From positions 1-64,000 of the IMG/VR virus record IMGVR_UViG_3300044846_005229: a stretch of 64,000 bases of DNA; one strand, 5' to 3'. Below, piece after piece: positions 4,650-58,478 of this stretch; position 1 is the stretch's first letter; every line of letters starts with the position of its first letter. The notes beneath the pieces are model-generated. The model saw only the letters and a list, made by a program, of their open reading frames with translations. It had not been told where the DNA came from and ran no database searches. Made by a program: the position numbers and the translations under genes.

Positions 4650-6017
4650 TTAGACTCCTTCATAATACATATTGATATACTTACGTGCGTTCTGATTGCT
4701 GACTTTCTCCCATACCCCCCTTCTAAATGATTCTGCCGAATGTTGAATGCCGAATGTTGCTATATCTTTAGCCTCACTCTTCGTCAGTCCGTCTTTTTCC
4801 ATTTCTGTCATCACTTTATTGAAATTCCTTTCCAACACATCAGCTTGTTTGCCTGTCGGGTAATTTGTCATCGCGAAGTTAGTCCCTGTCCATCCACCTA
4901 AAGCTTCAGATAAGGCTGCTTTCCAGTTTTTCTGAGATAACCCCAAATCAACAAACCTGGCCACCCCCTTATCATCAATAATTAAATTATCGCCCTTAGC
5001 ATCATTGTGGGCATACCCTAGTTTATGCAATTTTCCCATAGTGATATTGTAAGCGTCATCTTTGTCAATGCCATTGATCTTTTGAGGGGCCTTGTAAAGG
5101 GGGACTCCTGGAACAACTTCCATAGCAATCATACCTTTGTGGATGGTACCGTTATCCATGTTGCTATGGGCATTCTTTACGAATCTGGAGGCTATTAATT
5201 TGGGGCCCAAACCGACTTCCCCCAGTTTTTTAATTAAGGTAGCCTCAGTTCTACCGATATCCCCAACCTTAACGCCAATTTCATTAGGCATTCCATCCGA
5301 GTATCCAAGTAACTTCTTCGTGGGTATCTTCAGGAATGCTCCATAGCCCCCTGCACCCAATACCCGGGAGCCTGATCCTTCAACTGCGCTCCACTTTACC
5401 TTATCTGCTTTCTCTGAGCCATCAATGCTTATAGTGCCTTCGGGGCCTAGCCTTTTCATTTTGTCTAATAACTTACTGGCGGCTTCTCTGACTTTTCTTA
5501 CCTTATCTGCAGGGATATCACCATTCTTATGGGTAGTCATTGGGGCTGAGGGCCGAGTCCGTGCCACAGTTTCTTTAGGGGTCTTAGGAACTGGTTGATT
5601 CTTTAGTTTCTTGGCAGCATTTATTCTGCCTATAAGGGTGCGAAACCTTTGAATGGCTTGGCCAAAAAATAGTCCCAAGTTGTGTTCTTTGTCTTGAGTT
5701 TGCTTATTTATTGGTGGTGAATTCTTTCCCGTAGGGGGGTTCTTAATTGGGGGATTTTGGACAGGGGTAAAGGCAACTGGTTTGGTAACACCAAAAATCC
5801 TGTCCCTTACTTTTATCAGAGAACCCACAACAACATCAGGCAACTCGATAAGACAAGTCTTCACCCCTTCGATACAAGTTGCTGAGCAGCTTTTACCGAT
5901 AGAGCACCTTTTACGACCACCCCCGACAGCATTTGATTTGGACTTCAGAATCTCAGAACTCGATGGCGCATTGCCGGAGGGTGCCGCAAAGTTGAATTGT
6001 CCTTCACCATTTACCAC
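4650..6017 (-). CDS. Cys4-module protein with C-terminal protein-kinase-like domain (kinase 1)
   Basis: N-terminal CSIGKSCSATCIEGVKTC; kinase motifs GAGGYG (Gly loop), GVKVG (Lys), HNDAKGDN (catalytic loop), FVDLG (DFG-like). Confidence 0.75.
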   Translation of the reverse strand: MVNGEGQFNFAAPSGNAPSSSEILKSKSNAVGGGRKRCSIGKSCSATCIEGVKTCLIELPDVVVGSLIKVRDRIFGVTKPVAFTPVQNPPIKNPPTGKNSPPINKQTQDKEHNLGLFFGQAIQRFRTLIGRINAAKKLKNQPVPKTPKETVARTRPSAPMTTHKNGDIPADKVRKVREAASKLLDKMKRLGPEGTISIDGSEKADKVKWSAVEGSGSRVLGAGGYGAFLKIPTKKLLGYSDGMPNEIGVKVGDIGRTEATLIKKLGEVGLGPKLIASRFVKNAHSNMDNGTIHKGMIAMEVVPGVPLYKAPQKINGIDKDDAYNITMGKLHKLGYAHNDAKGDNLIIDDKGVARFVDLGLSQKNWKAALSEALGGWTGTNFAMTNYPTGKQADVLERNFNKVMTEMEKDGLTKSEAKDIATFGIQHSAESFRRGVWEKVSNQNARKYINMYYEGV

Positions 6018-6026
6018 GCGGTGCCT

Positions 6027-6206
6027 TTAACCCAGATATTGCCAAGCAGTGACTACATCCTCAGATACCAACCCATCAATATCCATCTTTTGAGCAGCGT
6101 CTAGGGCCCTAAGGGATTCAACCCGCTTGGCAGGGTCTCTGCGTAACTTTTTGTAACGCTCCATGAGCTTTTGGTATTTGTCGTCGTTGCTTAGTTGAGA
6201 TGCCAT
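6027..6206 (-). CDS. Small helical protein (59 aa), paralogue of 50001..50168
   Basis: Hand-translated MASQLSNDDKYQKLMERYKKLRRDPAKRVE...; below ORF-track cutoff; shares KYQKLM..YK..RRDPA with the 55-aa ORF at 50001..50168. Confidence 0.65.
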   Translation of the reverse strand: MASQLSNDDKYQKLMERYKKLRRDPAKRVESLRALDAAQKMDIDGLVSEDVVTAWQYLG

Positions 6207-6281
6207 TTGTTATGGGGGAGTTTTGAGTTATCAGGCTGTTAAGCCGCATACACCTATTATACCCCGTGGTCGCTGCCTTTG

Positions 6282-6407
6282 TCAACCTTCCTCTCGGTCT
6301 TCTTCGGATTTGATGAAATCCTTAAGGTCTTTGACATATACGCGAAGATCTTGGGCCTTTTGAAGATGCCAATGTTGTTTAGTTTTCAAGTAAAGCATCA
6401 TGTGGTT
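6282..6407 (-). pseudogene. 3' part of a 67-aa conserved cyanophage-type hypothetical gene interrupted by the IS605 element
   Basis: NHMMLYLKTKQHWHLQKAQDLRVYVKDLKDFIKSEEDREEG*; joins in frame with 7976..8053 when the IS is removed. Confidence 0.8.
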
Positions 6408-6600
6408 TTGACTTCCTCCCCGCCGTGAACGGCGGAGATTCCTTCTACGCTGCGCATGGGGATGCCTCAGCGATCGGGTGGGTTGGCGCTTCACAGCCTG
6501 CTGCCACCAAAGCGGTGGACTGATGCGTGGCTCCACGCCCGTTTCGACCCTCCGCCAGTCCGGCGGCGAGAATGTTCAAGGCAGCGTTGATGTCACGGTC
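6408..6600 (-). ncRNA. Predicted TnpB omegaRNA/reRNA scaffold (3' of tnpB to right end; guide is the flank AACCACATGATGCTTT...)
   Basis: Established for IS605 TnpB systems that the RNA overlaps the tnpB 3' end and right end; hairpins visible; 5' boundary is a guess. Confidence 0.55.
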
Positions 6601-7653
6601 GTGGACCGTTCCGCAGCTCGGGCACTGCCACTCCCGAATCGAAAGATCCTTCTTGCCGTCGTGATGCCCGCAGGTTGAGCACACCTGGCTGGTGGGGGGC
6701 CATCGGTTGATGACCACCACTTCACGCCCGTACTGCTCAGCCTTGGACTCCAGCAGGATCCGCAGCTGACGCCAGCCTGCATCGGCAATCGAGCGGGCCA
6801 GCTTCCTGTTCTTCAGCATCCCCGACACATTCAGGTCTTCCAGCACCACCGTTTGGTTCTCACGGATGAGGCGGGTCGAAAGCTGATGCTGATAGTCGAG
6901 GCGCCGATCGCCAACCTTGGCGTGCAGCTTGGCCACCTTGCGCCTGGCGATTACCAAGCGGTTGGAACCCCGTTGCTTGTGCTTCAGGTTGCGCTGTAGC
7001 CGCCGCAGTCGCTTGAGCGCAGAGCGCAGGAACTTCGGCGGGGCGAGCTTTTCACCGTCAGAAGTGACGGCGAGGGATACCAAGCCTAGGTCGATGCCAA
7101 CCGCCCTGCCATTCGCTGGCAAAGGAGTCGGCTCAATATCCACAACGAAGCTGGCGAAGAATCGCCCACTTGCATCGCGGATGACGGTGACGCTGCTCGG
7201 ATCCGAAGGCAGATCCCGGCTCCACTCAATCGGCACCGGGCCGATCTTGCTGAGCGTCAGCGTCCTCCCCCCTGTGCGGAACACATGGGACATGAAGCAA
7301 ACGGACTGCGCACCACGGCGCTTTTTGAAGCGTGGCGGCTTGACCTTCGCGCCCTTGCGCTTGCCTTTCAGGCTGGCCCACCAGTTGCGGTACGCCTGAT
7401 CGAGGTTGCGCACGGACTGCTGCAGCACCACATTGCTGGGCTCCGCCAGCCACTGCCGCTCTGGCGTCTGCTTGGCCTGCGTGATGCAGAGCTTGGCCAG
7501 GACGGGGTAGCTGGTCTTTTGCCCAGCGGCATACAGCTCACGGCTCTTGGCCAGGGCGTCGTTCCATACCACACGGGCGCAGCCGAACGCACGAGCCAGC
7601 GCCACCTGCTGATGCGGGTGGGGGTAGAGCCGGAAGCGGTAGCGTTGCTTCAT
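6445..7653 (-). CDS. tnpB: RNA-guided endonuclease TnpB
   Basis: MKQRYRFRLYP HTH start; RuvC-I GIDLG, RuvC-II VVLEDLNV, zinc finger CSTC/CPSC, RuvC-III HDRDINAA; all catalytic residues present. Confidence 0.95.
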   Translation of the reverse strand: MKQRYRFRLYPHPHQQVALARAFGCARVVWNDALAKSRELYAAGQKTSYPVLAKLCITQAKQTPERQWLAEPSNVVLQQSVRNLDQAYRNWWASLKGKRKGAKVKPPRFKKRRGAQSVCFMSHVFRTGGRTLTLSKIGPVPIEWSRDLPSDPSSVTVIRDASGRFFASFVVDIEPTPLPANGRAVGIDLGLVSLAVTSDGEKLAPPKFLRSALKRLRRLQRNLKHKQRGSNRLVIARRKVAKLHAKVGDRRLDYQHQLSTRLIRENQTVVLEDLNVSGMLKNRKLARSIADAGWRQLRILLESKAEQYGREVVVINRWPPTSQVCSTCGHHDGKKDLSIREWQCPSCGTVHDRDINAALNILAAGLAEGRNGRGATHQSTALVAAGCEAPTHPIAEASPCAA

Positions 7654-7682
7654 ACCAACCACCATACCAAACTTGGGGTGCA

Positions 7683-7949
7683 ATGGCGCAACCACCGCTT
7701 AGGCGAGGAAGGCACAGCGTTTCTCGGCTTGTCGTTCATTTGGTCTTTGTGGTCAAGTATCGGCGCAAGGCGCTGAGCGGGGCGGCATTGGATCGGATGC
7801 ACGAGGTCTGCCTGGGCATTGCCGAGCGGATGGGCTTCCAGCTGCTTGAGCTGAACGGCGAAGCAGACCATGTGCATCTGCTGGCGGGGCGCCCATCGAG
7901 CGTCTCAGGGAGTATGTGGAGTCTCAGGAAAAGCCGTCCTCAAGGACGG
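7683..7949 (+). pseudogene. tnpA: IS200-type Y1 transposase remnant (internal deletion plus frameshift)
   Basis: N-terminal ...HLVFVVKYRR...ADHVHLL (HUH) fused at ~7882/7883 to an out-of-frame C-terminal GGAPIERLREYVESQ (catalytic Tyr helix); the central part is missing. Confidence 0.85.
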
Positions 7950-7975
7950 GGTTTGTGTCCCAGAACAGCCCCGTT

Positions 7976-8053
7976 ATCAATGGCTTTAAGCAAGCTATGA
8001 ATTACTGGGTTCCACGGGCCCCTTATTGGGTTATCCCATTCTCTTTTTGACAT
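7976..8053 (-). pseudogene. 5' part of the IS-interrupted hypothetical gene
   Basis: MSKREWDNPIRGPWNPVIHSLLKAID, ending exactly at the TTGAT target. Confidence 0.8.
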
Positions 8054-10431: not shown

Positions 10432-12372
10432 TTAAGCCTCGCAAGCTGTGCAATCTGTGTATTCTGGGGTGGTTTCTGTGGGCAGATTAAACTTTAAGAC
10501 ACTGTTTTCTTCTTTGTACTGCATGTACTCGGTATAGCCCCCGATGTGCTTATCGTAAAGCCATAATTGAGGGACGGTTTTCCAGTCGTGGTTCCAGTAA
10601 CCCTTGTCAATAGCCTCTTGTTTGTCCATCTCTTTATAAGTAATACCACAGCGGTAGAGTTCTTGTTTCAGGCTGTCGCACCAAGGGCACCCTTCCTTGG
10701 TAACGATGAGAGCTGGGGCTTTCTTTTTCTTCGTTAGAAGAGAACTCGACTTAAGGTAATAAAGAGATTTGAGACCCATTTTCCAAGCAGACAGGTGAAG
10801 ACGCATAATATAATCTGCATCAGCTTCGGGGTCAACAAACAGGTTTAGGGATTGCCCTTGGCAAATAAAGGGTTGACGATCAGCGGCTTGTTTCACAAGC
10901 TCAAACTGATCAACTTCCCGAGCTGTCTTAAACACCTCTTTTTCCTTGTCCGTCAAGCAAGCAAGTCCTTGAACACTGCCCCTGGCTTCCAGAATCTCGT
11001 CCCACACTTCTGGCCCAACCCCTTTTTTACAAAGTAGGCTCTCAAGAATAGGGTTCTTCCGAACATATGAACCTTTGGCTTGCTTCGCTACGAAATAGTT
11101 CGAGGCAATGGGTTCAATTCCTTCCGACCCCGCTCCGCAAATAACACTATTTGTTTTTGTTGGAGCAACGGCTAACAAATGTGTATGGCGCTTCCCACTA
11201 CCGACACACCACTCAGGTTCCCCCAGCTTGACTGCCAGCTCCCTTGAAGCAGTTTCGGCCTCTTGGAGGATCCATTTGTGAACCTGGGTATTAAGTTCCC
11301 TGGCTTCTTGGGACTTAAAGGGTAAGCCTCTTTTCTGATAGAGGGTATGCAGGCCCATGACCCCTAAGCCCAATGCACGAGACTTCTCAGCGAAACGGAC
11401 CGAACGGCCCATCCCCACTTTGTCCTTAGCCTTGCGAATGAACTCGGAAACAACGGATTCTAGAAGGTGGACAGCAATCTGAGGCACTGAGCGGCCAGAA
11501 ACAGGGGAGCGCCAATCCTTAAACTCGTCGTATTTCGATAAGTTAAGAGAGGAAAGGACACAAACAAAGGAATGGTTTTCGTCGGTATGAAGAAACACTT
11601 CGGAACACAAATTACTCGTCTTCACTGTCAGCCCTCTCTCAACGTAACAGGCAGGGTTCTGATTGTTGGCGTTGTCAATGAAGATAAGGTAAGGGCTACC
11701 TGAAATCATTCTTGTCTTGAGTACCTCTCCAAAAAGCTCTTGTTTTTCCTTGTTACCTGCGATCATGGATTCTATCCATTCGTCTGTGATCGTTAGGGCT
11801 ATGTTACTGTCAATTTTTTGACGAGAGTCCCCGTTAGCATGATCTTTTGCTCTAAGGATTTCTGGCACGTCGGGGTGTGATATGGGCAGATACATCGCAA
11901 AGGATCCGCGACGAACACCCCCTTGGGAGACAACTGAAGCGCATAAGTCGTATTGCCTAGCCCAAGGGACTATGCCTGTAGACTTTCCACCGCCAGAAAT
12001 TGGAGTTCCTGCGGGCCTCACATCCCCAAAGTACACACCAACTCCTCCACCATTCTTACTCAAAGAAGCCACCTCCTTTAGATGGGAATAGATCGAGGAT
12101 ATACTATCGGTAAGATGTATAGAAAAACAACTTATAGGTTGCCCACGATTGGTACCAAAGTTGGAACAAACTGGACTTGCAGGTCCGATAAAACCATTCC
12201 ACAAACAGTGAAAGAGATCTTCTTCTAGGGTCGGATCTTGATTGAGTTTGGCTGCTGTTGAGGACAATCTCGTCATCATATCACGAGGTGTCTCACCAGG
12301 TAGTAAGTACCCTGCAGACAATGTGTGCAAAGCCTCTTCAGACATCCATTCGGGGTGAGGTGTATTGGTCAT
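10432..12372 (-). CDS. nrdA: Ribonucleotide reductase class Ia alpha subunit with fused glutaredoxin domain
   Basis: PISCF, NLCSE, VCVLSS, YYLKS catalytic motifs; then Grx domain (CPWC...TVPQ...IGGY) and terminal CTACEA. Confidence 0.93.
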   Translation of the reverse strand: MTNTPHPEWMSEEALHTLSAGYLLPGETPRDMMTRLSSTAAKLNQDPTLEEDLFHCLWNGFIGPASPVCSNFGTNRGQPISCFSIHLTDSISSIYSHLKEVASLSKNGGGVGVYFGDVRPAGTPISGGGKSTGIVPWARQYDLCASVVSQGGVRRGSFAMYLPISHPDVPEILRAKDHANGDSRQKIDSNIALTITDEWIESMIAGNKEKQELFGEVLKTRMISGSPYLIFIDNANNQNPACYVERGLTVKTSNLCSEVFLHTDENHSFVCVLSSLNLSKYDEFKDWRSPVSGRSVPQIAVHLLESVVSEFIRKAKDKVGMGRSVRFAEKSRALGLGVMGLHTLYQKRGLPFKSQEARELNTQVHKWILQEAETASRELAVKLGEPEWCVGSGKRHTHLLAVAPTKTNSVICGAGSEGIEPIASNYFVAKQAKGSYVRKNPILESLLCKKGVGPEVWDEILEARGSVQGLACLTDKEKEVFKTAREVDQFELVKQAADRQPFICQGQSLNLFVDPEADADYIMRLHLSAWKMGLKSLYYLKSSSLLTKKKKAPALIVTKEGCPWCDSLKQELYRCGITYKEMDKQEAIDKGYWNHDWKTVPQLWLYDKHIGGYTEYMQYKEENSVLKFNLPTETTPEYTDCTACEA

Positions 12373-13130
12373 TTTATTGAGTTCAGGAAAGTTGTCAAGG
12401 CTTGTAAGCTAGTTAGATTTAAATTTAACTCTGAATTGCAGGCCTTAGGCCCAACTATTCTACCATTTGGACTTTTTCTGTTTTTGTTAAGACTCCACCA
12501 CTCACGAATCCTACCGGAGTTGTCCGAAACGATAGCATAGTTGGGGTACCTTTTGCGAAGGAGTTCTTCAGACTCTTTTTTACCTTTTTTGTACTGGTTC
12601 CCCATTCTAGATAAAGACATTTTACGCTTGGCTTCGTCTGAAGCTTGTTTACCTTTTCTAGATTCTGACATTTTGCTCCTAGCTTCTGAGCTGTGTGTCC
12701 TGCCAAAAGAGGGATGGTCCTTCCCTCTACGCCCGTACATGGGATTTTTTTCCCCTTTATTATCAAACCCCATCTCTTTTAGAGCCTTTTTAACCCCCTC
12801 GGAGATAGCTAGTCTTTCTTTCTCTGTTCTAGGTCTACCCTTGTTATAGGCTTTAAGCCCAGTGGTGTCAAACTTGGTAGAAGTTTGGCAGGATCTGTTG
12901 ACGAACTCAGGGTTAGAAACAACTTCAAACACGTTCTGCCATTGTATTTCTGCTTTAGTTGCTGCTTCAGGTGAGTTAAATATTCCTAAAATAATCCTAG
13001 AGTCAGGGTTGAAAGTTTTATCAGAGAAGGACCCTAAATACTGGTCATAAAGGTCGTTAGTGCTGTGTTTTCCTATGTAATTTCGGCCATTATGGCTACC
13101 CTCATAGCTCAGATAAACTAAATGCCACAT
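12369..13130 (-). CDS. Free-standing GIY-YIG homing endonuclease with NUMOD3-like repeats
   Basis: HLVYLSY...NYIGKHST...YLGS and conserved Glu (KAEIQW); NPMYG/HPSFGRTHSSEARSKMS repeats. Confidence 0.85.
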   Translation of the reverse strand: MWHLVYLSYEGSHNGRNYIGKHSTNDLYDQYLGSFSDKTFNPDSRIILGIFNSPEAATKAEIQWQNVFEVVSNPEFVNRSCQTSTKFDTTGLKAYNKGRPRTEKERLAISEGVKKALKEMGFDNKGEKNPMYGRRGKDHPSFGRTHSSEARSKMSESRKGKQASDEAKRKMSLSRMGNQYKKGKKESEELLRKRYPNYAIVSDNSGRIREWWSLNKNRKSPNGRIVGPKACNSELNLNLTSLQALTTFLNSIK

Positions 13131-14107
13131 TAGATTAGCTCCAAATCCAGTGTTTTTAGATTTACCATGGAGTAGTCCTGTAGGGGTTTGGCCACATAGG
13201 AATCTCCTGACTTGGACTGACTAAAGAAATCATTATTGGTGGCCCCAGCGGCGATAGGCTCGAACCACTTTCTTATTACATTGGCTCTTTCTTTATTGAA
13301 GTCTAACTTTTGTTCTAATCCCAGTGCCCGGAGGCGATTATTGGCCCGGAAAAGAATGTATTGTCTTAGGTTTTCTGGGTCAATGGTATCAAGGTGGCGG
13401 TCATCAAAGATTGTCTCAATGAAGGCAAATTCGTTCTTGATGACAGCCTCAAAGCCCTTGAAGATGTTATCCGCCTCTTCTTCAGTCAAGGGGTCTTCTT
13501 TTATAAGGGCCTTGAAAAGCTCAATGCCTGTGTCACTATGCTGTTGCTCGTCGTTAATTGACCAGGAGATCAGTTGAGAAAGTCCTCTGTATTTCCCCTG
13601 GAGATTAAGAGAAAGCAATACAGAAAAGCTGCTAAATAATGAAACCCCCTCACCTGCACCACTGAAGATAGCAAGGGATTCTTTAATGTTACGGTCTTCT
13701 AAGAAAAAACTAATCTTCTTTTGGGCAACAGGGTCGCCAAGAAAGGCTTCGAACTCATCTAGGCCAAGTGTGTCTGACAGGAGATTATATGCGTGGGCAT
13801 GGACCACTTCCGATAGGGAAAACATTCTTGCTGCTGCTGCAATCTCATGTTTAGGAAACCAGTCTGGGATCTTGGACCAGTATTCCCCGATGTGCGTCTC
13901 AAGAATGGTGAACCCCCTTAGGATTCCCCCAACAATTTCTCTCTCATCTTGAGAGGCGCTCTGCCAATCCCGGATATCACTTTCGAGTGGAACTTCCTCG
14001 GGGCGCCACACGGATCCAAGTGCTTTCTGATATTGCTCGAAGAAGTAAGGAAACTCGAAGGTTCCGTTAATTTTGTAGGGTTCTCTGTATTCTCTGATGC
14101 TAGGCAT
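13130..14107 (-). CDS. nrdB: Ribonucleotide reductase class Ia beta subunit
   Basis: WRPEEVPLESD, EVVHAHAY, EGVSLFSSF, DEQQH di-iron motifs; NDFF and C-terminal Tyr. Confidence 0.93.
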   Translation of the reverse strand: MPSIREYREPYKINGTFEFPYFFEQYQKALGSVWRPEEVPLESDIRDWQSASQDEREIVGGILRGFTILETHIGEYWSKIPDWFPKHEIAAAARMFSLSEVVHAHAYNLLSDTLGLDEFEAFLGDPVAQKKISFFLEDRNIKESLAIFSGAGEGVSLFSSFSVLLSLNLQGKYRGLSQLISWSINDEQQHSDTGIELFKALIKEDPLTEEEADNIFKGFEAVIKNEFAFIETIFDDRHLDTIDPENLRQYILFRANNRLRALGLEQKLDFNKERANVIRKWFEPIAAGATNNDFFSQSKSGDSYVAKPLQDYSMVNLKTLDLELI

Positions 14108-16623: not shown

Positions 16624-16845
16624 TCAATCGTTATTTGACGAATAGTTAGGGGGACCCGGTAGATTCTCCCGCATTACCCAAGCTGTGGCTGCTTTCTGGG
16701 ACATCCATGCCTGTAGCAATTGCTTGCACAGACCTTGAAGGACTTTTAGATCAGTAGTGGAGTCTATAACTCTACCCATCCTCTCTAGTTCAAATTTTTG
16801 CCCCATAGTTAATTCCAAGGGGTTAACAATTCCGTCAGGATTCAT
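16624..16845 (-). CDS. nblA: NblA-like protein (picocyanobacterial type)
   Basis: ELTMGQKFELERMGRVIDSTTDLKVLQGLCKQLLQAWMSQKAATAWVM recalls Synechococcus/cyanophage NblA-like sequences (from memory, not searched). Confidence 0.6.
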   Translation of the reverse strand: MNPDGIVNPLELTMGQKFELERMGRVIDSTTDLKVLQGLCKQLLQAWMSQKAATAWVMRENLPGPPNYSSNND

Positions 16846-17318
16846 AGTGATTCATAGTATAAAACAGGTATTCCGGCCTCATAGAGGATGTCACTTGCTG
16901 TAGTTAGGCTATCTTTCCAGCTTCCGTGGTAGGAGTTCAAGTTAGGGCAGACGATTCTTTTGATCCCTGCACCAATGAGCACACTAGCACATCCGCTGCA
17001 TGGCGGGAAAGTGATGAAAGCCGAACAGCCGTCAGTGGACACACCTTCTTTGGCCGCCCATACAATGGCATTTTTCTCAGCGTGAATGATTACATTATTT
17101 TTGAAATACTTGTCATTCAACCTTATCGCAGTATCTGCTATTCCATTTGGGAAGCCATTGTACCCAGTAGAAACTATGCGATTTTCCTTGACCAAGACGC
17201 AACCGACTTTTTTGTAAGGGTCTTTGCTCCAGAGTTTAATGTCTTCAGCTAGCTGAATCCAGCGGAGATCCCATTTTGTAAGATGGGGGCTCTGATGATT
17301 CAATCTCTCGGTAGTCAC
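16842..17318 (-). CDS. dCMP deaminase
   Basis: HAEKNA and PCSGC zinc motifs; GYNG. Confidence 0.9.
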   Translation of the reverse strand: MTTERLNHQSPHLTKWDLRWIQLAEDIKLWSKDPYKKVGCVLVKENRIVSTGYNGFPNGIADTAIRLNDKYFKNNVIIHAEKNAIVWAAKEGVSTDGCSAFITFPPCSGCASVLIGAGIKRIVCPNLNSYHGSWKDSLTTASDILYEAGIPVLYYESL

Positions 17319-17586
17319 TTAAGGCTTCACTGAATTGTTTGCAAATGTGTTTCTTCGTTGTAAAGACTTCTTCATCACAATTTGCTATTTCTGTATAGAT
17401 ATTCCACAGGGATTCCGTATGTGCCAAACCATATTCCACTTGGAAGTAGGATAGAAGAATAGCAAGGTCAGGAAGGGAGCATGAGATGGTTCTCATCTCT
17501 TGGAAGGAGCAATCAGATGCCTTTAGTACGGGTCTATTTTTGGGTGGAATTGCCACTTTGTTGGGAGTACGGTCAGGGGCACTCAT
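17245..17586 (-). CDS. Hypothetical protein
   Basis: ORF between mazG and the deaminase; start uncertain. Confidence 0.4.
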   Translation of the reverse strand: MSAPDRTPNKVAIPPKNRPVLKASDCSFQEMRTISCSLPDLAILLSYFQVEYGLAHTESLWNIYTEIANCDEEVFTTKKHICKQFSEALSDYREIESSEPPSYKMGSPLDSAS

Positions 17587-17912
17587 CGGTTATCTCCACT
17601 TCCTGCGATGACCCCTCTCTCCTTTCTAGATGCAAGTTTGTCAATGTTTTGCTGTGCGATTGCATTAAGATCGGTTCCCATTTCTGTGGCCAATTGGGCA
17701 ACATACCAAAGCACATCCCCAAGCTCATCAGAAACAGATTTTCGGACCTCGTCTGAAAGAATGCCGGAATTATCCCGGATAACCTTCTTAAGTTTATTTG
17801 CGATTTCGCCAGCTTCACCAACGAGGCCAAGAGCAGGGTAGGTGAATTCTGAGCCCATATTGGGGTAGATGGCGGTTTCCCGGGCTCGATTTTGATAATA
17901 GTTAAAATCCAT
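17583..17912 (-). CDS. mazG: MazG-like nucleotide pyrophosphohydrolase
   Basis: LGLVGEAGEIANKLKK...DELGDVLWYV...N..KL..R. Confidence 0.9.
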   Translation of the reverse strand: MDFNYYQNRARETAIYPNMGSEFTYPALGLVGEAGEIANKLKKVIRDNSGILSDEVRKSVSDELGDVLWYVAQLATEMGTDLNAIAQQNIDKLASRKERGVIAGSGDNR

Positions 17913-19009: not shown

Positions 19010-19411
19010 TCAGGTTAAAGGTAACCGCAAGCTAGGCAAGAATCCGAGGCATAGCCCCGAAACTTTATCATTCACTCTCCTGACACCAACAATATAGTTG
19101 GAAGAAAAATACTCACCGGGTTGTGGGATAACGTAGTTATACTTGACAATCTGCCAAATTGGAACCAGAAAAAATGCATGTTCCAGGTCTTCGATGCCCT
19201 TTACACACAATTTAGCCAGGAGTCTAGGGGTATAGAGCTGGCAGTAGGTTTCTACTTCTTGTACAGTCCCGACTTTATCGTAAAGATTAGCGGGGTCATC
19301 GATGCAACTGAGACCTTCCGATTCTAGTTGTTCTTTAAGTCTTAGTTGCTTTTGGCATTCGTATGTAAATGAGTCCACGAAAGTATCCTGGTCGTTTGTA
19401 TGTAAGTTCAT
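19010..19411 (-). CDS. Hypothetical protein
   Basis: 133-aa ORF overlapping helicase stop (ATGA-type). Confidence 0.55.
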   Translation of the reverse strand: MNLHTNDQDTFVDSFTYECQKQLRLKEQLESEGLSCIDDPANLYDKVGTVQEVETYCQLYTPRLLAKLCVKGIEDLEHAFFLVPIWQIVKYNYVIPQPGEYFSSNYIVGVRRVNDKVSGLCLGFLPSLRLPLT

Positions 19412-22355
19412 ACTTTTACCCCCTTCGCTTCAAACATTTTTTCGCAAGCTTCTTTCCTAAGAATTTCAGCCCTATCTGGTGAATAGCCCTCGTTTGCCAT
19501 CCATTTGTCTTGGCATTTAGCTTTGGGATCAAGGATCCTATTTTTGTAGACACCTTCGACTTCACCCAATAGCCCGATTGCCTCGCGGACTAGGTCCTCT
19601 TGGGCATAGCGGCAGTTTTCCCAGTTTTCGATGATGTAGGAAGCTTCGCCACCAATTTTAAAGCCATCCCTAAGGACTAACTTTTCAATCATCTCCTTGA
19701 TGATCATCAGGGAAGTTTTTTCTTTAGTTTCTTTCCTGGCGCCAGTAGTCTCATCAAAGAGCATTTCCCGGCCAAGTGAAATTGACTTCTTGACTGATTC
19801 CCACCTTAGCTCCCTGAATCCCTGATAGTAGTGAGTAGATGGCCTACCTACATTGCACCAGTTATCTTTAAGTAAAGGCATTAAGTGTTGGCAACTGGGG
19901 TCAACCCCCACAAAATAGAGGCTCTCTAAGTAATCATAGAGGACGTTGGGTGTCAATTCTGGCATTCTTTCATCTATGTTTCCTGTGCGGATAAAATGAG
20001 CAAACGCCATAGCATTGACTAGGGCCTGGGTAACATCAGCCTTGAATCGAATTCTTTGCCGAGTCGTCCAATAACGGACTTCAACTTGGAGGCGATTGAT
20101 GGTGGGATCGGAGTCGTCGTTGATGATGTCTAGGAACCTATCAGTACAAAGCCTTAAGCACCATAGATACAAAGCATCTTTGCTTACCCCTAGTTTTTCT
20201 TCGAGGAACGGTATATGAGACTTTGGCCTGAGGTCAGGGGTGCCTTCAGATACGGTGCCTTCCAGATTTTCCTTGTTTTTTGCTACCTCATATTCTCTGA
20301 ATGTGCTGATTAGCTTGATGCGGTCAATACCTTGTATTAAAGAAAGGTCGTTAATCTTTCCCCAGGGGTTTACCCTGCTGAATGTTACCATTCAGAGTAG
20401 ACTATATCTTCACCCTTCGTTTCCTTTAGGTTGGAAGGGGACACTCGTTTCGAGTCACTTGACCCTACTCCCTCTCGGGATAGCCGTTCGGCGTTTAGTA
20501 ATTTATCCAACTGGTAACTATACTTGAGACCTATTGAATAAATTCCATTTAGCACGGGATTGTCCTTATAGCAAGGAGTTCCCCCGTTTAGAGTGTGTTT
20601 TTTACTGAGCGTTACCGCCCAGGGGAACTAGAGAGTTAATCCCCGGATCGAGGTCATAAGCAAACTTACTATTCCAATCATTGGAGTTCAGGAGCATGAC
20701 GGTTTTTGGCCAGATTTGCTCTGAAGTTTGGAACTTGTCTTCTACTTGTAATACCATGTGTTCAAACGGTTTCGCTAATTCCGTCCCGGGATTTAACCCA
20801 GCTAAATGTTACCATTTAGAGCAGACTATATCATATTCCCTTAGGAATCTTCCCGTTTCGGATCGCTTGATCCTACTCTCTTTCGAGATAGTCGTTAGGC
20901 TTCGTATCCCCATGGTTTCATGCCTTTACAGCAGAAAACTCTGAAGATACCTTAGCACGGTAGGTTGCCCTTAAGTATCAAAGGGTATTCCCCGTTTAGA
21001 GAAGTTTTCTCTAGGACATTACTGACCTAGGGGGCTACTAGTTAACCCATTCGTAATCATAATCTTAGTCTCCTCAGCAGAAAGGAATTTCTTAAGAGAA
21101 GATAAGGATGTGTCGTCTTTATCCTATTGTTCGGTCAAACTTCGTTACAGTTCAACCCGAGGTTTCCCTCAGCTACAGGTTTCCCAGTAGAGCAGACTAT
21201 ATCTTCATCCCTACTTTCATAGGGAGCTTCGCGTTTCCCCTCACTTGAGGGTACGGAGTAAACTCCTAGTCGTTGAGCCTCTTTAACATGTTGGTACCAT
21301 ATTGAAGTTGGCTGCTGATTGCCCATTGTTTCATCCTCTAGGATTATTAGTTAGTGTTGAGCCAACTACCCGAGGCTCTTAGGGGTTTCCAGCAAATAGC
21401 GAAGTTTTACTTGCGCAAAAGTCTACGCAATGTCACTCATCGCAAAGGACTTAACACCAAATCGTTCTTCAGTGGACTTAAAAGTCCAGATCGAAAATCC
21501 GCATTTGGAAAAAGCAGCAGTCATACTGTTAAAGCATTCGGATTTCCCAAGTCCAGGGTCCTTACCAACTACAACCCCTGCCATACGGGCAGTATGTTGA
21601 ACTGCCTTGTCCTTACCTGGTGGGAGGTGATTAGATCTACCTACCCCAATCCTCCCAATAATTAGCTTGAGAATTTCTAACTCAGCTTCTGGAAAAATCG
21701 TAAATACATCCGACAATTTAACCTGACGAAGCACAGGATCGAACCAATCCCTGTCCGGGACCCAAATCCGGGGATTAGTTACAACAGTTCCCCCCAACCT
21801 GGCCATCGGATCAAACGTATGGGCAAAATCAAACTCTGGGTAGAAATTTTTCGATTGGCTGATTTTTTGCATCTTCAACAGACGGGCCGTAAAAGAAGCT
21901 AGATCGCTATCGCCTGGTTTCGGACGGTGTAGCGGCTCCCAGAAAGTTCGAACTTCATCTTCGCACAACCCAGGATAAAACACCTTCTCAATGTCTTCAA
22001 AATCTGCCATTTCGGTGATGTCTTGAAGTGGTTTGAAGGTATGGGGATACTTAATCCCTTTGACTTCCGGGGGGGCCGCAGGTTTTAGGATCCGGTGATT
22101 AACGTGGGGTGCCCCTTCTACGAGGTCTAGGATGTAACCCTTCGCCTTTAGTAGGGCAATACCCTTATTATACAACTCACTTACCCTGACAGGCTCTTTT
22201 TTCTTCTTACCTTTCTTGTCTTCGGAGTCTTTTGGATTCTCCCCCTCGTCTTTTTCTGAGGAAAAAACCCTAGCCTTCTTCAATTCTTGGGCTTGATTGA
22301 AAATGGCGATTTCTTGTTTGGTACTCCCTGTACCACCTGAATAGGGGTCTGGCAT
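19408..22355 (-). CDS. SF3 (D5/P4-alpha-like) DNA helicase, spliced: join(22355..21425, 21122..21045, 20753..20639, 20329..19408), 681 aa
   Basis: Exon 1 carries Walker A GKDPGLGKS; splicing restores Walker B (DIAYKDD), TNGLLQVEDKF, motif C (MLLNSN) and DPGIIDR. Exon lengths 931+78+115+922 = 2046 nt = 682 codons in frame. Confidence 0.85.
20330..20638 (-). ncRNA. Group I intron 3 (IA2-like, 309 nt, no ORF)
   Basis: P1 GGGGAU/GUUCCC with U.G at splice site; P3 ACACUC/GAGUGU; P7 GGCUA/UAGUC; P7.1 and P7.2 hairpins; J8/7 AAGAUAUAGUC; terminal G at 20330. Confidence 0.88.
20754..21044 (-). ncRNA. Group I intron 2 (IA2-like, 291 nt, no ORF)
   Basis: P1 GGGU/GCCC; P10 UAGUA/UAUUA; P3 CUUCUC/GGGAAG; P7 GACUA/UAGUC; P7.1 UCUC-GAAA-GAGA, P7.2 GGAUC-AAGC-GAUCC; terminal G at 20754. 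Confidence 0.9.
21123..21424 (-). ncRNA. Group I intron 1 (IA2-like, 302 nt, no endonuclease ORF)
   Basis: P1 UUGCGU/GCGCAA; P (UUUGCUGGAAA), Q (AAUCAGCAG), R (UCAACGACUA), S (AAGAUAUAGUC); P3 CUUCGC/GCGAAG; P7.1/P7.2; terminal G at 21123. Confidence 0.9.
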
Positions 22356-56747: not shown

Positions 56748-58478
56748 TCAGAGCGATAACCCATAACCAGTGTCATCCCTGTTGAGGCGAGGTCTGGAAA
56801 AAGAGTCTGGACCGATAAAACCAGAACCAGAATCTAAATTATTGTAAAGTCCAGCCGAGGGTAAATTCCTCCCTACTCTACCAGTAGGTAAATTCGAATC
56901 ACCCAGGAATGGCCTTCTGTTTCCTCCGTTCCACCTCCTCGCTTGTATTATAGCATCTTGTACCCCACGGTCAACGGTGTCTAGCTTCATCGCATAGTAC
57001 GTCAGGGACCACACAAACGCATCCACCGAGTCATCGTGCTTAACGAAGGGGAATCCTGTTAGCTCCTTAATAAAACTATCCACCCATAACCCCTCAACGA
57101 GTTTAACCCTATCATTCTCTAGAAGTGGACAAACAGCTTCGAGTCTAACCGTTTTTGACCTAAGGGGTCTCATTTCTTCTACAGGTATTTTTGTTTCCCG
57201 TCTCAACATTTGTATCAAAGATTGGCCGGATGCTGCCTTTTCGATACAGATTACTTTTGGTTTGTAGAAGGAATGTAGTTGCTTAATAGATGCAATCAAA
57301 TCAGGGAAGCCCCATCTCCCTTTAACGATTTCCCTAATGTAAACAGTTCGGGGGTCCCTAGTTGAAATGCCAGCCACACAGACCGCAGTTTCGTCTGCAC
57401 CTTCTTTTTCAGAAAATGCACAGTCTACACCTAGCCATACTACATCTAGTGGTGGGCACTTTTCTTCTTCTATCCTAACTATCCACCCAGCCTTTACAAT
57501 TTGACCTTCTGCTGCAGTTGGAGTCCCTTGATAAAGGGCCGCAAATTTGGAACTGCCCATAGTTTTCTTTTGGGCTTCCAGCATATCAACCGAGAATGCC
57601 GGGTTATCAGGCCAATGGGACTCACCGATTTGCCTGCCTAAGGGGTCATCGACAGGGTCTTCACACAGGCCCGCAATATTCACCCATCTCCAACCTTCTG
57701 GGTTTTCTTCCTCATCATAGCTACCGTCCGATTCTAAAACCTGGCCATGCAAATCATTGGCATGAAACCTGGTCGCAATAATTAGACGGCAATAATTGTT
57801 AGTTTTACGTGTCGATGCCTCTTCTTGCCACCACGTTTGGAGACTCTCAAAAGCCCTGGCAGAAGCTGAGCTTTTCAGTGGGTCGTCGATTACCATGGCC
57901 CCCACACCTGGGCTAATAATGTTTACAGACCCTGCCGTATGGCCAGTCAACACACCACCGACAGAAGTAGGCAGGATGTATCCGCCACTAAGCATCTCAA
58001 ATTTAGAGTCCCTAGCAAAACCTTTCCAATCAGGGAAGATTTTCTTAAAGACAGGTGTCTTCAACATGCCGATAACTTCCTTATGGAACTTATTGGACAG
58101 TGATAAACCATAAGAGGCAATAACGTGTTGAGTTTCTTGATCTCTTCCTAGTAACCAAGCCACAAACATCGACGCCAGCATTGATTTACCAGATCGAGGG
58201 GGACAGGATACGATCAAGTTATGGTAGCGTTTATTTGCTAGATCCTCAAAACCACTGGCAATAATTTCATGGAAATCCGCGACTTTTAACGCACCACCCT
58301 TCATCAAGTCTGCAAAGGCCAGGAAACAATACCTGGAAGACTCAAACATGTAGTTCTGAATGACAGAGTTTGGTGCTTCTAAGACATTAAGATGATGTAA
58401 ACCCCTAATGTAATGGCGCCATGAGCTGTGTTCATCTAGTTGACTAGCGTGGTTTATTATCGGCCGTGGGAGTGTCAT
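56748..58478 (-). CDS. terL: Terminase large subunit
   Basis: SCPPRSGKS, MVIDDP, ATRFH, LGVDCAFS, IEKAASG, FPFVKHDDSVDA. Confidence 0.9.
   Translation of the reverse strand: MTLPRPIINHASQLDEHSSWRHYIRGLHHLNVLEAPNSVIQNYMFESSRYCFLAFADLMKGGALKVADFHEIIASGFEDLANKRYHNLIVSCPPRSGKSMLASMFVAWLLGRDQETQHVIASYGLSLSNKFHKEVIGMLKTPVFKKIFPDWKGFARDSKFEMLSGGYILPTSVGGVLTGHTAGSVNIISPGVGAMVIDDPLKSSASARAFESLQTWWQEEASTRKTNNYCRLIIATRFHANDLHGQVLESDGSYDEEENPEGWRWVNIAGLCEDPVDDPLGRQIGESHWPDNPAFSVDMLEAQKKTMGSSKFAALYQGTPTAAEGQIVKAGWIVRIEEEKCPPLDVVWLGVDCAFSEKEGADETAVCVAGISTRDPRTVYIREIVKGRWGFPDLIASIKQLHSFYKPKVICIEKAASGQSLIQMLRRETKIPVEEMRPLRSKTVRLEAVCPLLENDRVKLVEGLWVDSFIKELTGFPFVKHDDSVDAFVWSLTYYAMKLDTVDRGVQDAIIQARRWNGGNRRPFLGDSNLPTGRVGRNLPSAGLYNNLDSGSGFIGPDSFSRPRLNRDDTGYGLSL

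What the first reader, a model, noticed from the sequence alone, without database searches (positions are those of the whole stretch)
19408..22355. Three tandem ORF-less group I introns split the phage SF3 helicase into four exons
Seen in sequence: the ~1.1-kb 'intergenic' gap between ORFs 21423..22355 and 19408..20391 holds three complete ribozyme cores (21123-21424, 20754-21044, 20330-20638). Each has P1 with a U.G pair at the 5' splice site, P3, P7 (G(A/G)CUA/UAGUC), P7.1/P7.2 hairpins, J8/7 GAUAUAGUC and a terminal G. Excision leaves 78-nt and 115-nt mini-exons and one 681-aa ORF. The junctions fall at the conserved motifs: Walker B (DIA|Y KDD), TNG|L LQVEDKF and DPG|I IDR. Established: P7.1/P7.2 marks subgroup IA2 (T4 td/nrdB type), and a three-intron gene is known from Staphylococcus phage Twort. 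Inference: this density of introns in a cyanophage helicase is unusual, and automated annotation would report two unrelated hypotheticals.
Basis: partly seen in the sequence, partly recalled or inferred. Interest (0 to 1): 0.9.

Follow-up and report, generated by a model that had tools for sequence, protein, structure and literature searches.

The report
Three self-splicing introns split phage helicase
The replication helicase gene of an uncultured freshwater phage is cut into four pieces by three self-splicing group I introns that related phages carry in different combinations, which is a well-supported but not unprecedented case of mobile introns in a phage gene.

Summary
Rfam's group I intron model hits all three elements above its threshold (83, 58 and 65 bits). 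Removing 21123-21424, 20754-21044 and 20330-20638 (minus strand) leaves exons of 931, 78, 115 and 922 nt and one 681-aa open frame. That product aligns without gaps across all three junctions to contiguous homologues.

Close relatives in metagenomes lack intron 1, intron 3 or both, precisely at the predicted nucleotides. A lake metatranscriptome contig joins all four exons, skipping exactly 302, 291 and 309 nt. Its haplotype carries introns 1 and 2 in DNA, so those two are removed at RNA level. Intron 3 has no RNA evidence of its own.

The window's introns have no endonuclease gene, but introns 1 and 3 hold remnants of one. In relatives, intron 3 carries either a GIY-YIG or an HNH endonuclease gene.

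The host protein is a D5/P4-type SF3 helicase by Pfam DUF5906, conserved motifs and predicted fold. Databases call it "DNA primase".

The closest precedent is the three-intron orf142 of Staphylococcus phage Twort. This is a new member of a known kind. Public gene calls split it into unrelated hypothetical proteins.

The parts
21425..22355 (-). Exon 1 (931 nt): N-terminal domain, Walker A (GKDPGLGKS) and the first half of Walker B, ending ...D-I-A plus the first base of the Tyr311 codon.
   Evidence: ORF list. Hits PHROG 25243 positions 11-273. Aligns to contiguous homologues.
21123..21424 (-). Intron 1, group I, 302 nt, no P2 and an extended P5. P1 is 21430-21425 paired with IGS 21416-21411. 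P3 is 21404-21399 with 21232-21227. P7 is 21271-21267 with 21199-21195. The terminal G is at 21123.
   Evidence: RF00028, 83.2 bits. Helices checked. Absent precisely in L011, L013 and L016. An RNA contig skips exactly 302 nt.
21135..21326 (-). 63-aa ORF inside intron 1. It is a deletion remnant of the 217-aa intron ORF present in L010/L015 and has the same start (MGNQQPTS).
   Evidence: The intact ORF has no Pfam or PHROG hit. The protein atlas points to NUMOD3/GIY-YIG clusters, which is a lead only.
21045..21122 (-). Exon 2 (78 nt mini-exon): Walker B acidic pair (Y-KDD) through ...KIMITNG.
   Evidence: Contiguous with its neighbours in S-CBWM1, A-HIS1, S-TIM5, Mic1 and 29 IMG/VR contigs.
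20754..21044 (-). Intron 2, group I, 291 nt. P1 is 21048-21043 with 21037-21032. P2 is 21030-21024 with 21017-21011. P3 is 21004-20999 with 20854-20849. P7 is 20893-20889 with 20828-20824. The terminal G is at 20754.
   Evidence: RF00028, 58.0 bits. Present in every close relative. Skipped (291 nt) in RNA contigs of two runs from different studies. 77% identical to intron 3.
20639..20753 (-). Exon 3 (115 nt mini-exon): LLQVEDKF ... motif C (LLNSND) ... DLDPG plus two bases of the Ile375 codon.
   Evidence: Hits PHROG 25243 positions 305-340. Alignment.
20330..20638 (-). Intron 3, group I, 309 nt. P1 is 20644-20637 with 20630-20623. P2 is 20622-20616 with 20611-20605 (GUAA loop). P3 is 20596-20591 with 20446-20441. 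P7 is 20485-20481 with 20404-20400. The terminal G is at 20330.
   Evidence: RF00028, 64.7 bits. Absent precisely in L010/L015, L011/L017 and L016. Homologous intron at the same codon phase in L018 and L021. About 73-75% identical to the 3' part of the T4 td intron.
20385..20555 (-). 56-aa ORF inside intron 3. Its first 8 codons and the next 13 match the start and the end of the 227-aa GIY-YIG endonuclease ORF of L007, so it is a remnant left by deletion of the endonuclease gene.
   Evidence: The L007 ORF hits Pfam GIY-YIG and NUMOD3.
19408..20329 (-). Exon 4 (922 nt including the stop): arginine finger (I-IDR) and the C-terminal helical domain. The mechanical ORF 19408-20391 starts 62 nt too early, inside intron 3.
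   Evidence: Hits PHROG 25243 positions 342-585. Alignment.

Best explanation
One gene on the minus strand (22355-19408) encodes a 681-aa D5/P4-type superfamily-3 replicative helicase, which databases call 'DNA primase'. Three IA-type (T4 td-like) group I introns interrupt its coding sequence inside the ATPase core: in the Walker B motif, in the following strand/hairpin region, and just before the arginine finger.

After transcription each intron folds into a ribozyme. A free guanosine bound in P7 attacks the 5' splice site, which is marked by the U.G pair in P1. The released 5' exon then attacks the bond after the terminal G, and the exons are ligated. Three such reactions restore the open frame.

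The introns are, or recently were, mobile DNA. In related phages introns 1 and 3 are present or absent at exactly these sites and carry homing endonuclease genes. The copies in this window have lost those genes by internal deletion. Intron 2 is as similar to intron 3 as intron 3 orthologues are to each other, and its insertion site resembles that of intron 3. It probably arose by transposition of an intron-3-like element to a look-alike site 115 nt upstream.

**Shown:** ribozyme cores, exact boundaries, a continuous product, presence/absence polymorphism, endonuclease ORFs in relatives, and exon-joined RNA for introns 1 and 2.

**Inferred:** autocatalysis without protein help, splicing of intron 3 in this haplotype, ongoing homing, and the origin of intron 2.
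For: - **Covariance model.** Three RF00028 hits reach 58-83 bits against a 50-bit threshold.
- **RNA structure.** Canonical helices are present, and 32 of 65 predicted pairs show compensatory changes across nine copies.
- **Spliced product.** It is 681 aa with no stop. It aligns without gaps across all junctions to S-CBWM1 gp136, A-HIS1 ORF016, S-TIM5 and Mic1 and to 24 IMG/VR contigs over essentially its whole length at 54-64% identity.
- **PHROG profile.** Exons 1, 3 and 4 hit PHROG 25243 colinearly at positions 11-273, 305-340 and 342-585.
- **Intron-less alleles.** L010 joins exons 3 and 4 with a sequence identical to the predicted junction. L011, L013 and L016 join exons 1 and 2 at the predicted nucleotide.
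- **RNA, run X2.** A 378-nt metatranscriptome contig spans all four exons and skips exactly 302, 291 and 309 nt. Its variants match the L010 haplotype, with 10 of 10 differences in exon 1, none in exon 3, and 5 of 5 listed SNPs unique to L010. L010 DNA contains introns 1 and 2.
- **RNA, run X1.** A contig from a different study skips intron 2 on an L011-type haplotype, which carries intron 2 in DNA.
- **Selection.** Between the three-intron and one-intron haplotypes, 161 codon differences are synonymous and 27 change the amino acid.
- **Endonucleases.** Intron 3 holds an HNH_3 ORF in L005, L006 and L012 and a GIY-YIG/NUMOD3 ORF in L007 and L021. The window retains remnants.
- **Host protein.** 38 of 40 homologues hit DUF5906. 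The AlphaFold model (pLDDT 91) matches ASFV PrimPol, SaPI5 primase-helicase, vaccinia D5 and MPXV E5 at probability 1.00.
Against: - No RNA evidence is specific to intron 3. The joined exon 3-exon 4 contig has the L010 haplotype, which lacks intron 3 in DNA.
- The RNA evidence consists of low-depth assembled contigs (word depth 3-6) from metatranscriptomes that may contain DNA. An unseen, fully intron-less DNA haplotype that otherwise matches L010 cannot be excluded.
- P10 of intron 3 is only 2 bp.
- Self-splicing in vitro was not and could not be tested here.
- The window's own exon fragments give no Pfam hit. The helicase assignment rests on contiguous homologues.
Confidence: 0.9

Rival explanations
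1. The exon-joined RNA contigs come from DNA or transcripts of intron-less alleles. In vivo splicing is then unproven, and one or more introns, above all intron 3 in this haplotype, may splice poorly or need a protein cofactor.
For: Alleles lacking introns 1 and 3 exist in DNA. The read tool warns that RNA libraries can hold DNA and that contigs show presence only. Intron 3 has no RNA evidence of its own and a weak P10.
Against: All 13 close-relative loci fetched (several are the same contig in two collections) carry intron 2, yet two RNA runs from different studies skip it. The X2 contig matches the L010 haplotype, whose DNA holds introns 1 and 2. The three-intron haplotype is widespread, with its exon 1 product listed in 65 blocks of the collection. 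Its exons are under purifying selection, which is hard to reconcile with an unspliceable intron in the helicase gene.
Confidence: 0.07
2. The gene is a decaying pseudogene. The introns are dead relics and the phage relies on another helicase.
For: The endonuclease ORFs in the window's introns are degraded. Gene callers find only fragments.
Against: The ribozyme cores are intact and covary. The spliced frame is open over 681 codons. Synonymous differences outnumber amino-acid changes 161 to 27. All invariant helicase residues are kept. Joined exons are seen in RNA.
Confidence: 0.02
3. The arrangement is an assembly artefact or chimera of metagenome contigs, or the insertions are another kind of element such as inteins or insertion sequences.
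For: The window is a metagenome-assembled sequence.
Against: L008 and L009, from two different IMG/VR data sets, are identical to the window over their whole 12.9 kb. Contigs from four further data sets (L005/L014, L006, L007, L012) carry all three introns at the same sites, with an endonuclease ORF in intron 3. The insertions contain stops in the host frame and match the group I model, not inteins.
Confidence: 0.01

Closest known systems
Staphylococcus phage Twort orf142 (Landthaler & Shub 1999, as summarised in PMC10136302)
   Same: [quoted passage not shown]
   Different: The host gene here is an SF3 helicase in an uncultured freshwater phage related to cyanophages. The short exons are 78 and 115 nt rather than 23 nt. 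Exon skipping was not seen in the RNA contigs. Presence/absence polymorphism and endonuclease turnover are documented here across natural haplotypes. Self-splicing has not been tested biochemically.
T4 td, nrdB and nrdD (sunY) introns (subgroup IA2, with I-TevI/II/III)
   Same: The core architecture includes P7.1/P7.2 and P9.1/P9.2. Local sequence matches to the td intron are 73-75% over about 150 nt for intron 3, 70% for intron 2 and 79% over 38 nt for intron 1. GIY-YIG/NUMOD endonuclease ORFs sit in a peripheral loop in relatives. Insertion is in a conserved nucleotide-metabolism or replication gene. Distribution among related phages is patchy.
   Different: In T4 the three introns are in three different genes. 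Here three sit within 1.1 kb of one gene. One intron hosts an HNH ORF in some relatives and a GIY-YIG ORF in others.
HNH-encoding group I introns of Bacillus phage DNA polymerase genes (SPO1, SP82, Bastille) and other phage introns tabulated in PMC1995217 and reviewed in PMC3984707
   Same: Group I introns with HNH or GIY-YIG homing endonucleases target conserved codons of phage replication genes.
   Different: Those genes carry single introns, and the target gene and host group differ.
D5/P4-type SF3 primase-helicases (vaccinia D5, MPXV E5, ASFV C962R PrimPol, SaPI5 primase-helicase, NrS-1)
   Same: This concerns the host protein, not the introns. It has a DUF5906 ATPase core with Walker A, Walker B, motif C and an arginine finger. 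These proteins are the top Foldseek matches at probability 1.00 (PMC9611036).
   Different: Sequence identity is only 9-14%. No D5_N, Pox_D5 or primase Pfam domain was detected. The N- and C-terminal domains are family-specific.

Membership tests
Group I intron (Rfam RF00028) | Score at or above the curated gathering threshold of the covariance model | tested here: met
   83.2, 58.0 and 64.7 bits against a 50-bit threshold.
Group I intron (Rfam RF00028) | P1 with a U.G wobble pair at the 5' splice site, and a terminal G at the 3' end | tested here: met
   All three introns meet both. The U.G is kept in 8 of 8 aligned copies. Only these boundaries fit both rules given the 1-2 nt repeat at each junction.
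Group I intron (Rfam RF00028) | Conserved core: P3-P8 and P4-P6 domains with P7 (the guanosine-binding helix) forming the P3/P7 pseudoknot | tested here: met
   P3, P4, P5, P7, P8 and P9 were located and pair correctly. RNAalifold recovers P1-P9.2 with compensatory changes in 32 of 65 pairs. P7 is a pseudoknot and was checked by script only.
Group I intron (Rfam RF00028) | Exons are ligated at RNA level | tested here: met
   Introns 1 and 2: joined in metatranscriptome contigs of haplotypes that carry them in DNA. Intron 3: inconclusive, because the joined form seen has a haplotype that lacks it in DNA.
Group I intron (Rfam RF00028) | Guanosine-dependent self-splicing in vitro | not testable with these tools
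   Needs transcription and splicing assays.
Subgroup IA2 (T4 td type) | Peripheral P7.1 and P7.2 hairpins between P7 and P3' | tested here: met
   Present in all three introns. This feature marks subgroup IA as a whole, not IA2 alone.
Subgroup IA2 (T4 td type) | Assignment to IA2 rather than IA1 or IA3 | tested here: inconclusive
   The only support is similarity to the T4 td intron: 73-75% over about 150 nt for intron 3, with weaker matches for introns 1 and 2. No subgroup-specific models were available.
Mobile (homing) group I intron | Intron-encoded homing endonuclease gene | tested here: not met
   The window's copies hold only remnants. Relatives hold HNH_3 (L005, L006, L012), GIY-YIG/NUMOD3 (L007; frameshifted in L021) and an unclassified 217-aa ORF (L010).
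Mobile (homing) group I intron | Presence/absence polymorphism at an identical site among close relatives | tested here: met
   Introns 1 and 3 meet this. Intron 2 is fixed in the close clade but absent from all wider relatives examined.
Mobile (homing) group I intron | The endonuclease cleaves the intron-less allele and the intron is copied in | not testable with these tools
   Needs cleavage assays or co-infection crosses.
SF3 helicase, D5/P4 type (Pfam DUF5906 core) | Pfam DUF5906 domain | tested here: met
   38 of 40 contiguous homologues hit it, best E 4e-13. A-HIS1, S-TIM5 and Mic1 are above the cut-off and S-CBWM1 is just below. The window's separate exon products give no hit because the domain is split.
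SF3 helicase, D5/P4 type (Pfam DUF5906 core) | Walker A, Walker B, motif C asparagine and arginine finger, in that order | tested here: met
   Invariant G264, G266, K267, D309, D310, N357 and R374 (P0002 numbering) are all present in the spliced product.
SF3 helicase, D5/P4 type (Pfam DUF5906 core) | Fold similarity to solved SF3 D5-type helicases | tested here: met
   The model of homologue P0002 (pLDDT 91, pTM 0.86) has ASFV PrimPol, SaPI5 primase-helicase, D5 and E5 as top Foldseek hits, with E 1e-7 to 1e-5 and probability 1.00. TM-scores are modest, 0.3 to 0.5.
DNA primase (the database name of the family) | A recognisable primase catalytic domain (AEP/PrimPol or DnaG/TOPRIM) | tested here: not met
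   No primase Pfam family hits any of 44 homologues. The N-terminal roughly 250 aa remain unassigned.

The most novel reading that the evidence does not exclude
The locus is an actively evolving intron cluster rather than three independent relics.

- **Origin of intron 2.** An intron-3-like element transposed within the gene to a look-alike site (GGGT^TATT against GGAT^TATT) 115 nt upstream and became fixed as intron 2.
- **Endonuclease turnover.** Endonuclease genes of two unrelated families have been swapped in and out of intron 3.
- **Competition.** The endonuclease-bearing versions serve in competition between co-infecting strains by cutting the essential helicase gene of intron-less rivals.
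- **Exon skipping.** Because introns 2 and 3 are similar and exons 3 and 4 both begin UAUU, skipping of exon 3, as in Twort orf142, could also modulate helicase output.
Probability: 0.3. Interest if true: 0.6.

Novelty: new member of a known kind. Interest (0 to 1): 0.45.

Why it matters
**Annotation.** Public gene calls split this replication gene into fragments of 310, 63, 51 and 327 aa with no domain hit. The phage therefore appears to lack a helicase, and protein clusters are polluted with truncated products. Intron-aware annotation would fix this for a phage lineage seen in many freshwater samples.

**Intron biology.** One natural population shows every stage of the homing cycle within a single gene: empty site, intron with an intact endonuclease gene, intron with a frameshifted one, and intron with only a remnant. 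One intron also hosts two unrelated endonuclease families in different relatives, and a pair of paralogous introns hints at transposition within the gene. That makes this a convenient system for studying intron gain, loss and endonuclease exchange.

**Insertion sites.** The case supports the rule that phage introns sit at the most conserved codons of replication genes.

Tried and rejected
- **Pfam on the separate exon products** gave nothing. The family was identified only through PHROGs and contiguous homologues.
- **Sequence search of PDB**, with one homologue and with a 40-sequence profile, reached only generic P-loop matches. Fold search was needed.
- **Megablast against isolate phages** found no close genome, only the T4 td-like stretch of intron 3.
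- **Rfam at the gathering threshold** misses the endonuclease-bearing intron copies: L005 and L007 intron 3, L010 intron 1, and L021/L037. Those were identified by alignment instead.
- **Short representatives P0022 and P0018** were checked as possible further interrupted genes. L019 is cut by the contig end. L020 ends 80 nt before the contig end with a divergent tail. Neither is informative.
- **The 217-aa ORF of L010 intron 1** shows no BLASTP similarity to the L007 GIY-YIG protein and no Pfam or PHROG hit. Only a language-model lead points to NUMOD3/GIY-YIG.
- **The metagenome-contig scan** mostly returned the same contigs as IMG/VR.
- **Literature searches** found no description of this locus or of introns in this helicase family.
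- **Rejected readings:** inteins (the insertions carry stops and match a ribozyme model), group II introns (no Rfam hit) and assembly chimeras (the same arrangement appears in independent assemblies).
Full report
**What is in the sequence**

The region 22355-19408 lies on the minus strand. It has two large ORFs, 21423-22355 (310 aa) and 19408-20391 (327 aa), separated by about 1.1 kb that holds only short ORFs.

A scan of the whole window against Rfam 15 gives exactly three hits above threshold. All are to the group I intron model RF00028 and all lie in this gap:
- 21454-21173: 83.2 bits, E 1e-19
- 21054-20802: 58.0 bits, E 4e-12
- 20648-20378: 64.7 bits, E 4e-14

A more permissive scan adds no further intron anywhere in the 64 kb. 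Chance is therefore excluded.

**Boundaries and product**

With them the exons measure 931, 78, 115 and 922 nt. They join into a 2046-nt frame encoding 681 aa with no internal stop.

Each 5' splice site follows a U that pairs with G in P1.

**RNA structure**

A script located and checked the helices in each intron: P1, P2 (absent in intron 1), P3, P4, P7 (GACUA/UAGUC, or GGCUA/UAGUC in intron 3), the P7.1 and P7.2 hairpins, P8, P9 and P9.1, plus J8/7 GAUAUAGUC.

RNAalifold was run on nine copies: the three from the window, intron 3 of L018, and five intron 2 variants. It recovers P1, P2, the long-range P3, P4, P5, P7.1, P7.2, P8, P9, P9.1 and P9.2 without prior information. 32 of 65 predicted pairs are kept through changes on both sides.

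P7.1/P7.2 place the introns in subgroup IA. All three introns give local matches to the T4 td intron (73-75% over about 150 nt for intron 3, 70% for intron 2, 79% over 38 nt for intron 1), which points to IA2. I could not run a formal subgroup classifier.

**Comparative test of the splice model**

- The exon products hit PHROG 25243 ('DNA primase', 610 positions) colinearly. Exon 1 covers positions 11-273, exon 3 covers 305-340 and exon 4 covers 342-585. The space left is the right size for exon 2.
- tblastn finds contiguous homologues only in cyanophages: S-CBWM1, A-HIS1, the S-TIM5 group and Mic1. The gaps between the exon 1 and exon 4 matches are 195-207 nt, against 193 nt for exons 2 plus 3.
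- The spliced protein aligns to these four without a single gap at any junction. S-CBWM1, for example, reads DVAYKDDTSLQSLKK...ILITNGLLQTEEKF...DIDPGIQDRIK.
- A degenerate pattern for the uninterrupted site 2 motif retrieved 29 IMG/VR contigs. 24 of them encode essentially the whole protein in one piece at 54-64% identity.

**Natural intron-less and intron-plus alleles**

Close relatives at 95-100% protein identity in exon 1 (about 90-100% at the DNA level), taken from IMG/VR and JGI metagenomes, show the following occupancy:

| Loci | Intron 1 | Intron 2 | Intron 3 |
|---|---|---|---|
| window, L008, L009 | present, no ORF | present | present, no ORF |
| L005 = L014, L006, L012 | present | present | present, 169-aa HNH_3 ORF |
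| L007 | present | present | present, 227-aa GIY-YIG/NUMOD3 ORF |
| L010 = L015 | present, 217-aa ORF | present | absent |
| L011 = L017, L016 | absent | present | absent |
| L013 | absent | present | contig ends |

L010's exon 3-exon 4 join is letter for letter the predicted spliced sequence. The exon 1-exon 2 joins of L011, L013 and L016 fall at the predicted nucleotide.

More distant relatives carry a homologous intron at site 3 in the same codon phase. L018 is 55-57% identical in protein and its intron has no ORF. L021 and L037 are 67-71% identical and their intron holds a frameshifted GIY-YIG ORF. All three are uninterrupted at sites 1 and 2.

**RNA evidence**

Four metatranscriptome runs hold parts of the gene.

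In run X2 (lake water), one 378-nt contig covers 143 nt of exon 1, all of exon 2, all of exon 3 and 41 nt of exon 4. Its three joints skip exactly 302, 291 and 309 nt. Its differences from the window identify the L010 haplotype:
- 10 of 10 differences in the exon 1 part
- none in exon 3
- all five listed variant positions unique to L010

L010 DNA contains intron 1 (with its ORF) and intron 2 but not intron 3. The contig therefore shows removal of introns 1 and 2 at RNA level. For intron 3 it shows only the genomic absence.

In run X1 (freshwater sediment, a different study), a contig with an L011-type exon 1 end skips intron 2, which all L011-type DNA carries.

Three caveats apply. These are low-depth assembled contigs. 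RNA libraries can contain DNA. An unseen intron-less DNA haplotype cannot be excluded.

**Function of the gene**

The gene is under purifying selection. Between the three-intron window and the one-intron L011, 161 codon differences are synonymous and 27 change the amino acid.

- Pfam places the interrupted region of contiguous homologues in DUF5906. 38 of 40 homologues hit it, and Mic1 also reaches the SF3 RNA_helicase model.
- DUF5906 is the AAA+ core of D5-type SF3 helicases (PMC9611036).
- In a 40-sequence alignment the invariant residues are the Walker A G-x-GK, the Walker B DD, two lysines, the motif C asparagine, and D-x-G...R.
- The junction codons Y311, L337 and I375 sit respectively inside Walker B, four codons before the conserved E-x-K, and directly after the invariant glycine three codons before the arginine finger.
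- An AlphaFold model of homologue P0002 (pLDDT 91, pTM 0.86) matches ASFV PrimPol, the SaPI5 primase-helicase, vaccinia D5 and MPXV E5 at probability 1.00.
- No primase domain was detected, so the database name 'DNA primase' is untested.

**History of the introns**

The window's 56-aa ORF in intron 3 (20385-20555) consists of the first eight codons of the L007 GIY-YIG ORF, followed directly by its last thirteen, and then reads on into the ribozyme core. The 63-aa ORF in intron 1 shares its start and end with the 217-aa ORF of L010. The 'ORF-less' state is therefore derived, by deletion of the endonuclease genes.

Intron 3 holds an HNH gene in some relatives and a GIY-YIG gene in others, at nearly the same point.

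Pairwise identities between the introns are:
- intron 2 to intron 3: 77%, and 82% from P7 to the end
- intron 3 in the window to intron 3 in L018: 78%
- intron 1 to the others: 64-71%

The two insertion sites resemble each other (GGGT^TATTAC and GGAT^TATTGA). I infer that intron 2 arose from an intron-3-like element that moved to a look-alike site. This is inference only.

**Comparison with what is known**

Group I introns in phages sit in conserved protein-coding genes and carry GIY-YIG or HNH endonucleases (PMC3984707, PMC1995217).

Three introns in one phage gene has a direct precedent. [quoted passage not shown]

I found no paper describing introns in this helicase family or in S-CBWM1-like phages. 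This is a new member of a known kind.

**Annotation**

Public gene calls over the locus list products of 310, 63, 51 and 327 aa with no Pfam hit on any of them, plus the endonuclease where present, which does hit GIY-YIG or HNH_3. L018 is likewise split into 370- and 304-aa genes.

**Verdict**

My confidence is 0.9 that these are three functional self-splicing introns in an SF3 helicase gene. Interest is moderate: the case is well documented and useful for studying intron dynamics, but it is not a new kind of system.

Noticed in passing
window 6445-7695 (-), within 6001-8000: A 416-aa ORF has HTH_OrfB_IS605, OrfB_IS605 and Cas12f1-like TNB domains, i.e. TnpB. It sits in a GC island (0.587 against about 0.45 elsewhere) and looks like an IS605-family element inserted in the phage genome.
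   Followed up: no
L005:7840-8349, L007:7818-8501 (relatives of window intron 3, 20330-20638): The same intron at the same site carries an HNH_3 endonuclease ORF in some haplotypes and a GIY-YIG/NUMOD3 ORF in another, inserted within about 20 nt of each other. This suggests endonuclease-gene replacement inside a resident intron.
   Followed up: partly
L010:7030-7683 (relative of window intron 1): A 217-aa intron ORF starts in the P5'/P4' strands and runs through the core to P9. It has no Pfam, PHROG or BLASTP match. The protein-language-model atlas places it nearest phage NUMOD3/GIY-YIG (SegE-like) clusters, score 0.92, which is a lead only.
   Followed up: partly
P0110 (816-aa homologue): A LAGLIDADG_3 domain and about 280 extra residues lie directly after Walker A. 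This is probably an intein in the P-loop of the same helicase family, so the ATPase core is targeted by both inteins and introns.
   Followed up: partly
L011:6920-6945, L013, L016 (site 1, window 21425/21122): All three intron-1-less close alleles read ATATCGT|ATAAGG (Asp-Ile-Ser-Tyr) where intron-bearing alleles read ATTGCGT|ATAAAG (Asp-Ile-Ala-Tyr). The change weakens pairing with intron 1's guide sequence. It could be a homing-site variant or simple divergence.
   Followed up: no
window 21045/20753 and 20639/20329 (sites 2 and 3): The two insertion sites look alike (GGGT^TATTAC and GGAT^TATTGA). Exons 3 and 4 both begin UAUU, so intron 2's guide sequence could also pair with the start of exon 4. 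That is a possible basis for exon-3 skipping as in Twort orf142. No such joint was listed in the RNA contigs.
   Followed up: partly
L011, L016 against window, exon 2-intron 2-exon 3 (window 20639-21122): In the most divergent close haplotypes the central block is more similar to the window (exon 2 94%, intron 2 94-96%, exon 3 94-96%) than exon 1 (90-91%) or, in L011, exon 4 (90%). This fits either more recent exchange of the intron with its flanks or stronger constraint.
   Followed up: no
window 10432-12372 (-), 13130-14107 (-), 16842-17318 (-), 17583-17912 (-), 56748-58478 (-): Context genes: ribonucleotide reductase large subunit with a fused C-terminal glutaredoxin domain, RNR small subunit, dCMP deaminase, MazG and terminase large subunit. 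The order from helicase to dCMP deaminase matches S-CBWM1. No tRNA genes are present.
   Followed up: no
L009, L053 (contigs of 279 and 284 kb): Some contigs carrying this locus are about twice the 139-kb genome of the nearest isolate, S-CBWM1. This could mean a larger genome or concatenated assemblies.
   Followed up: no
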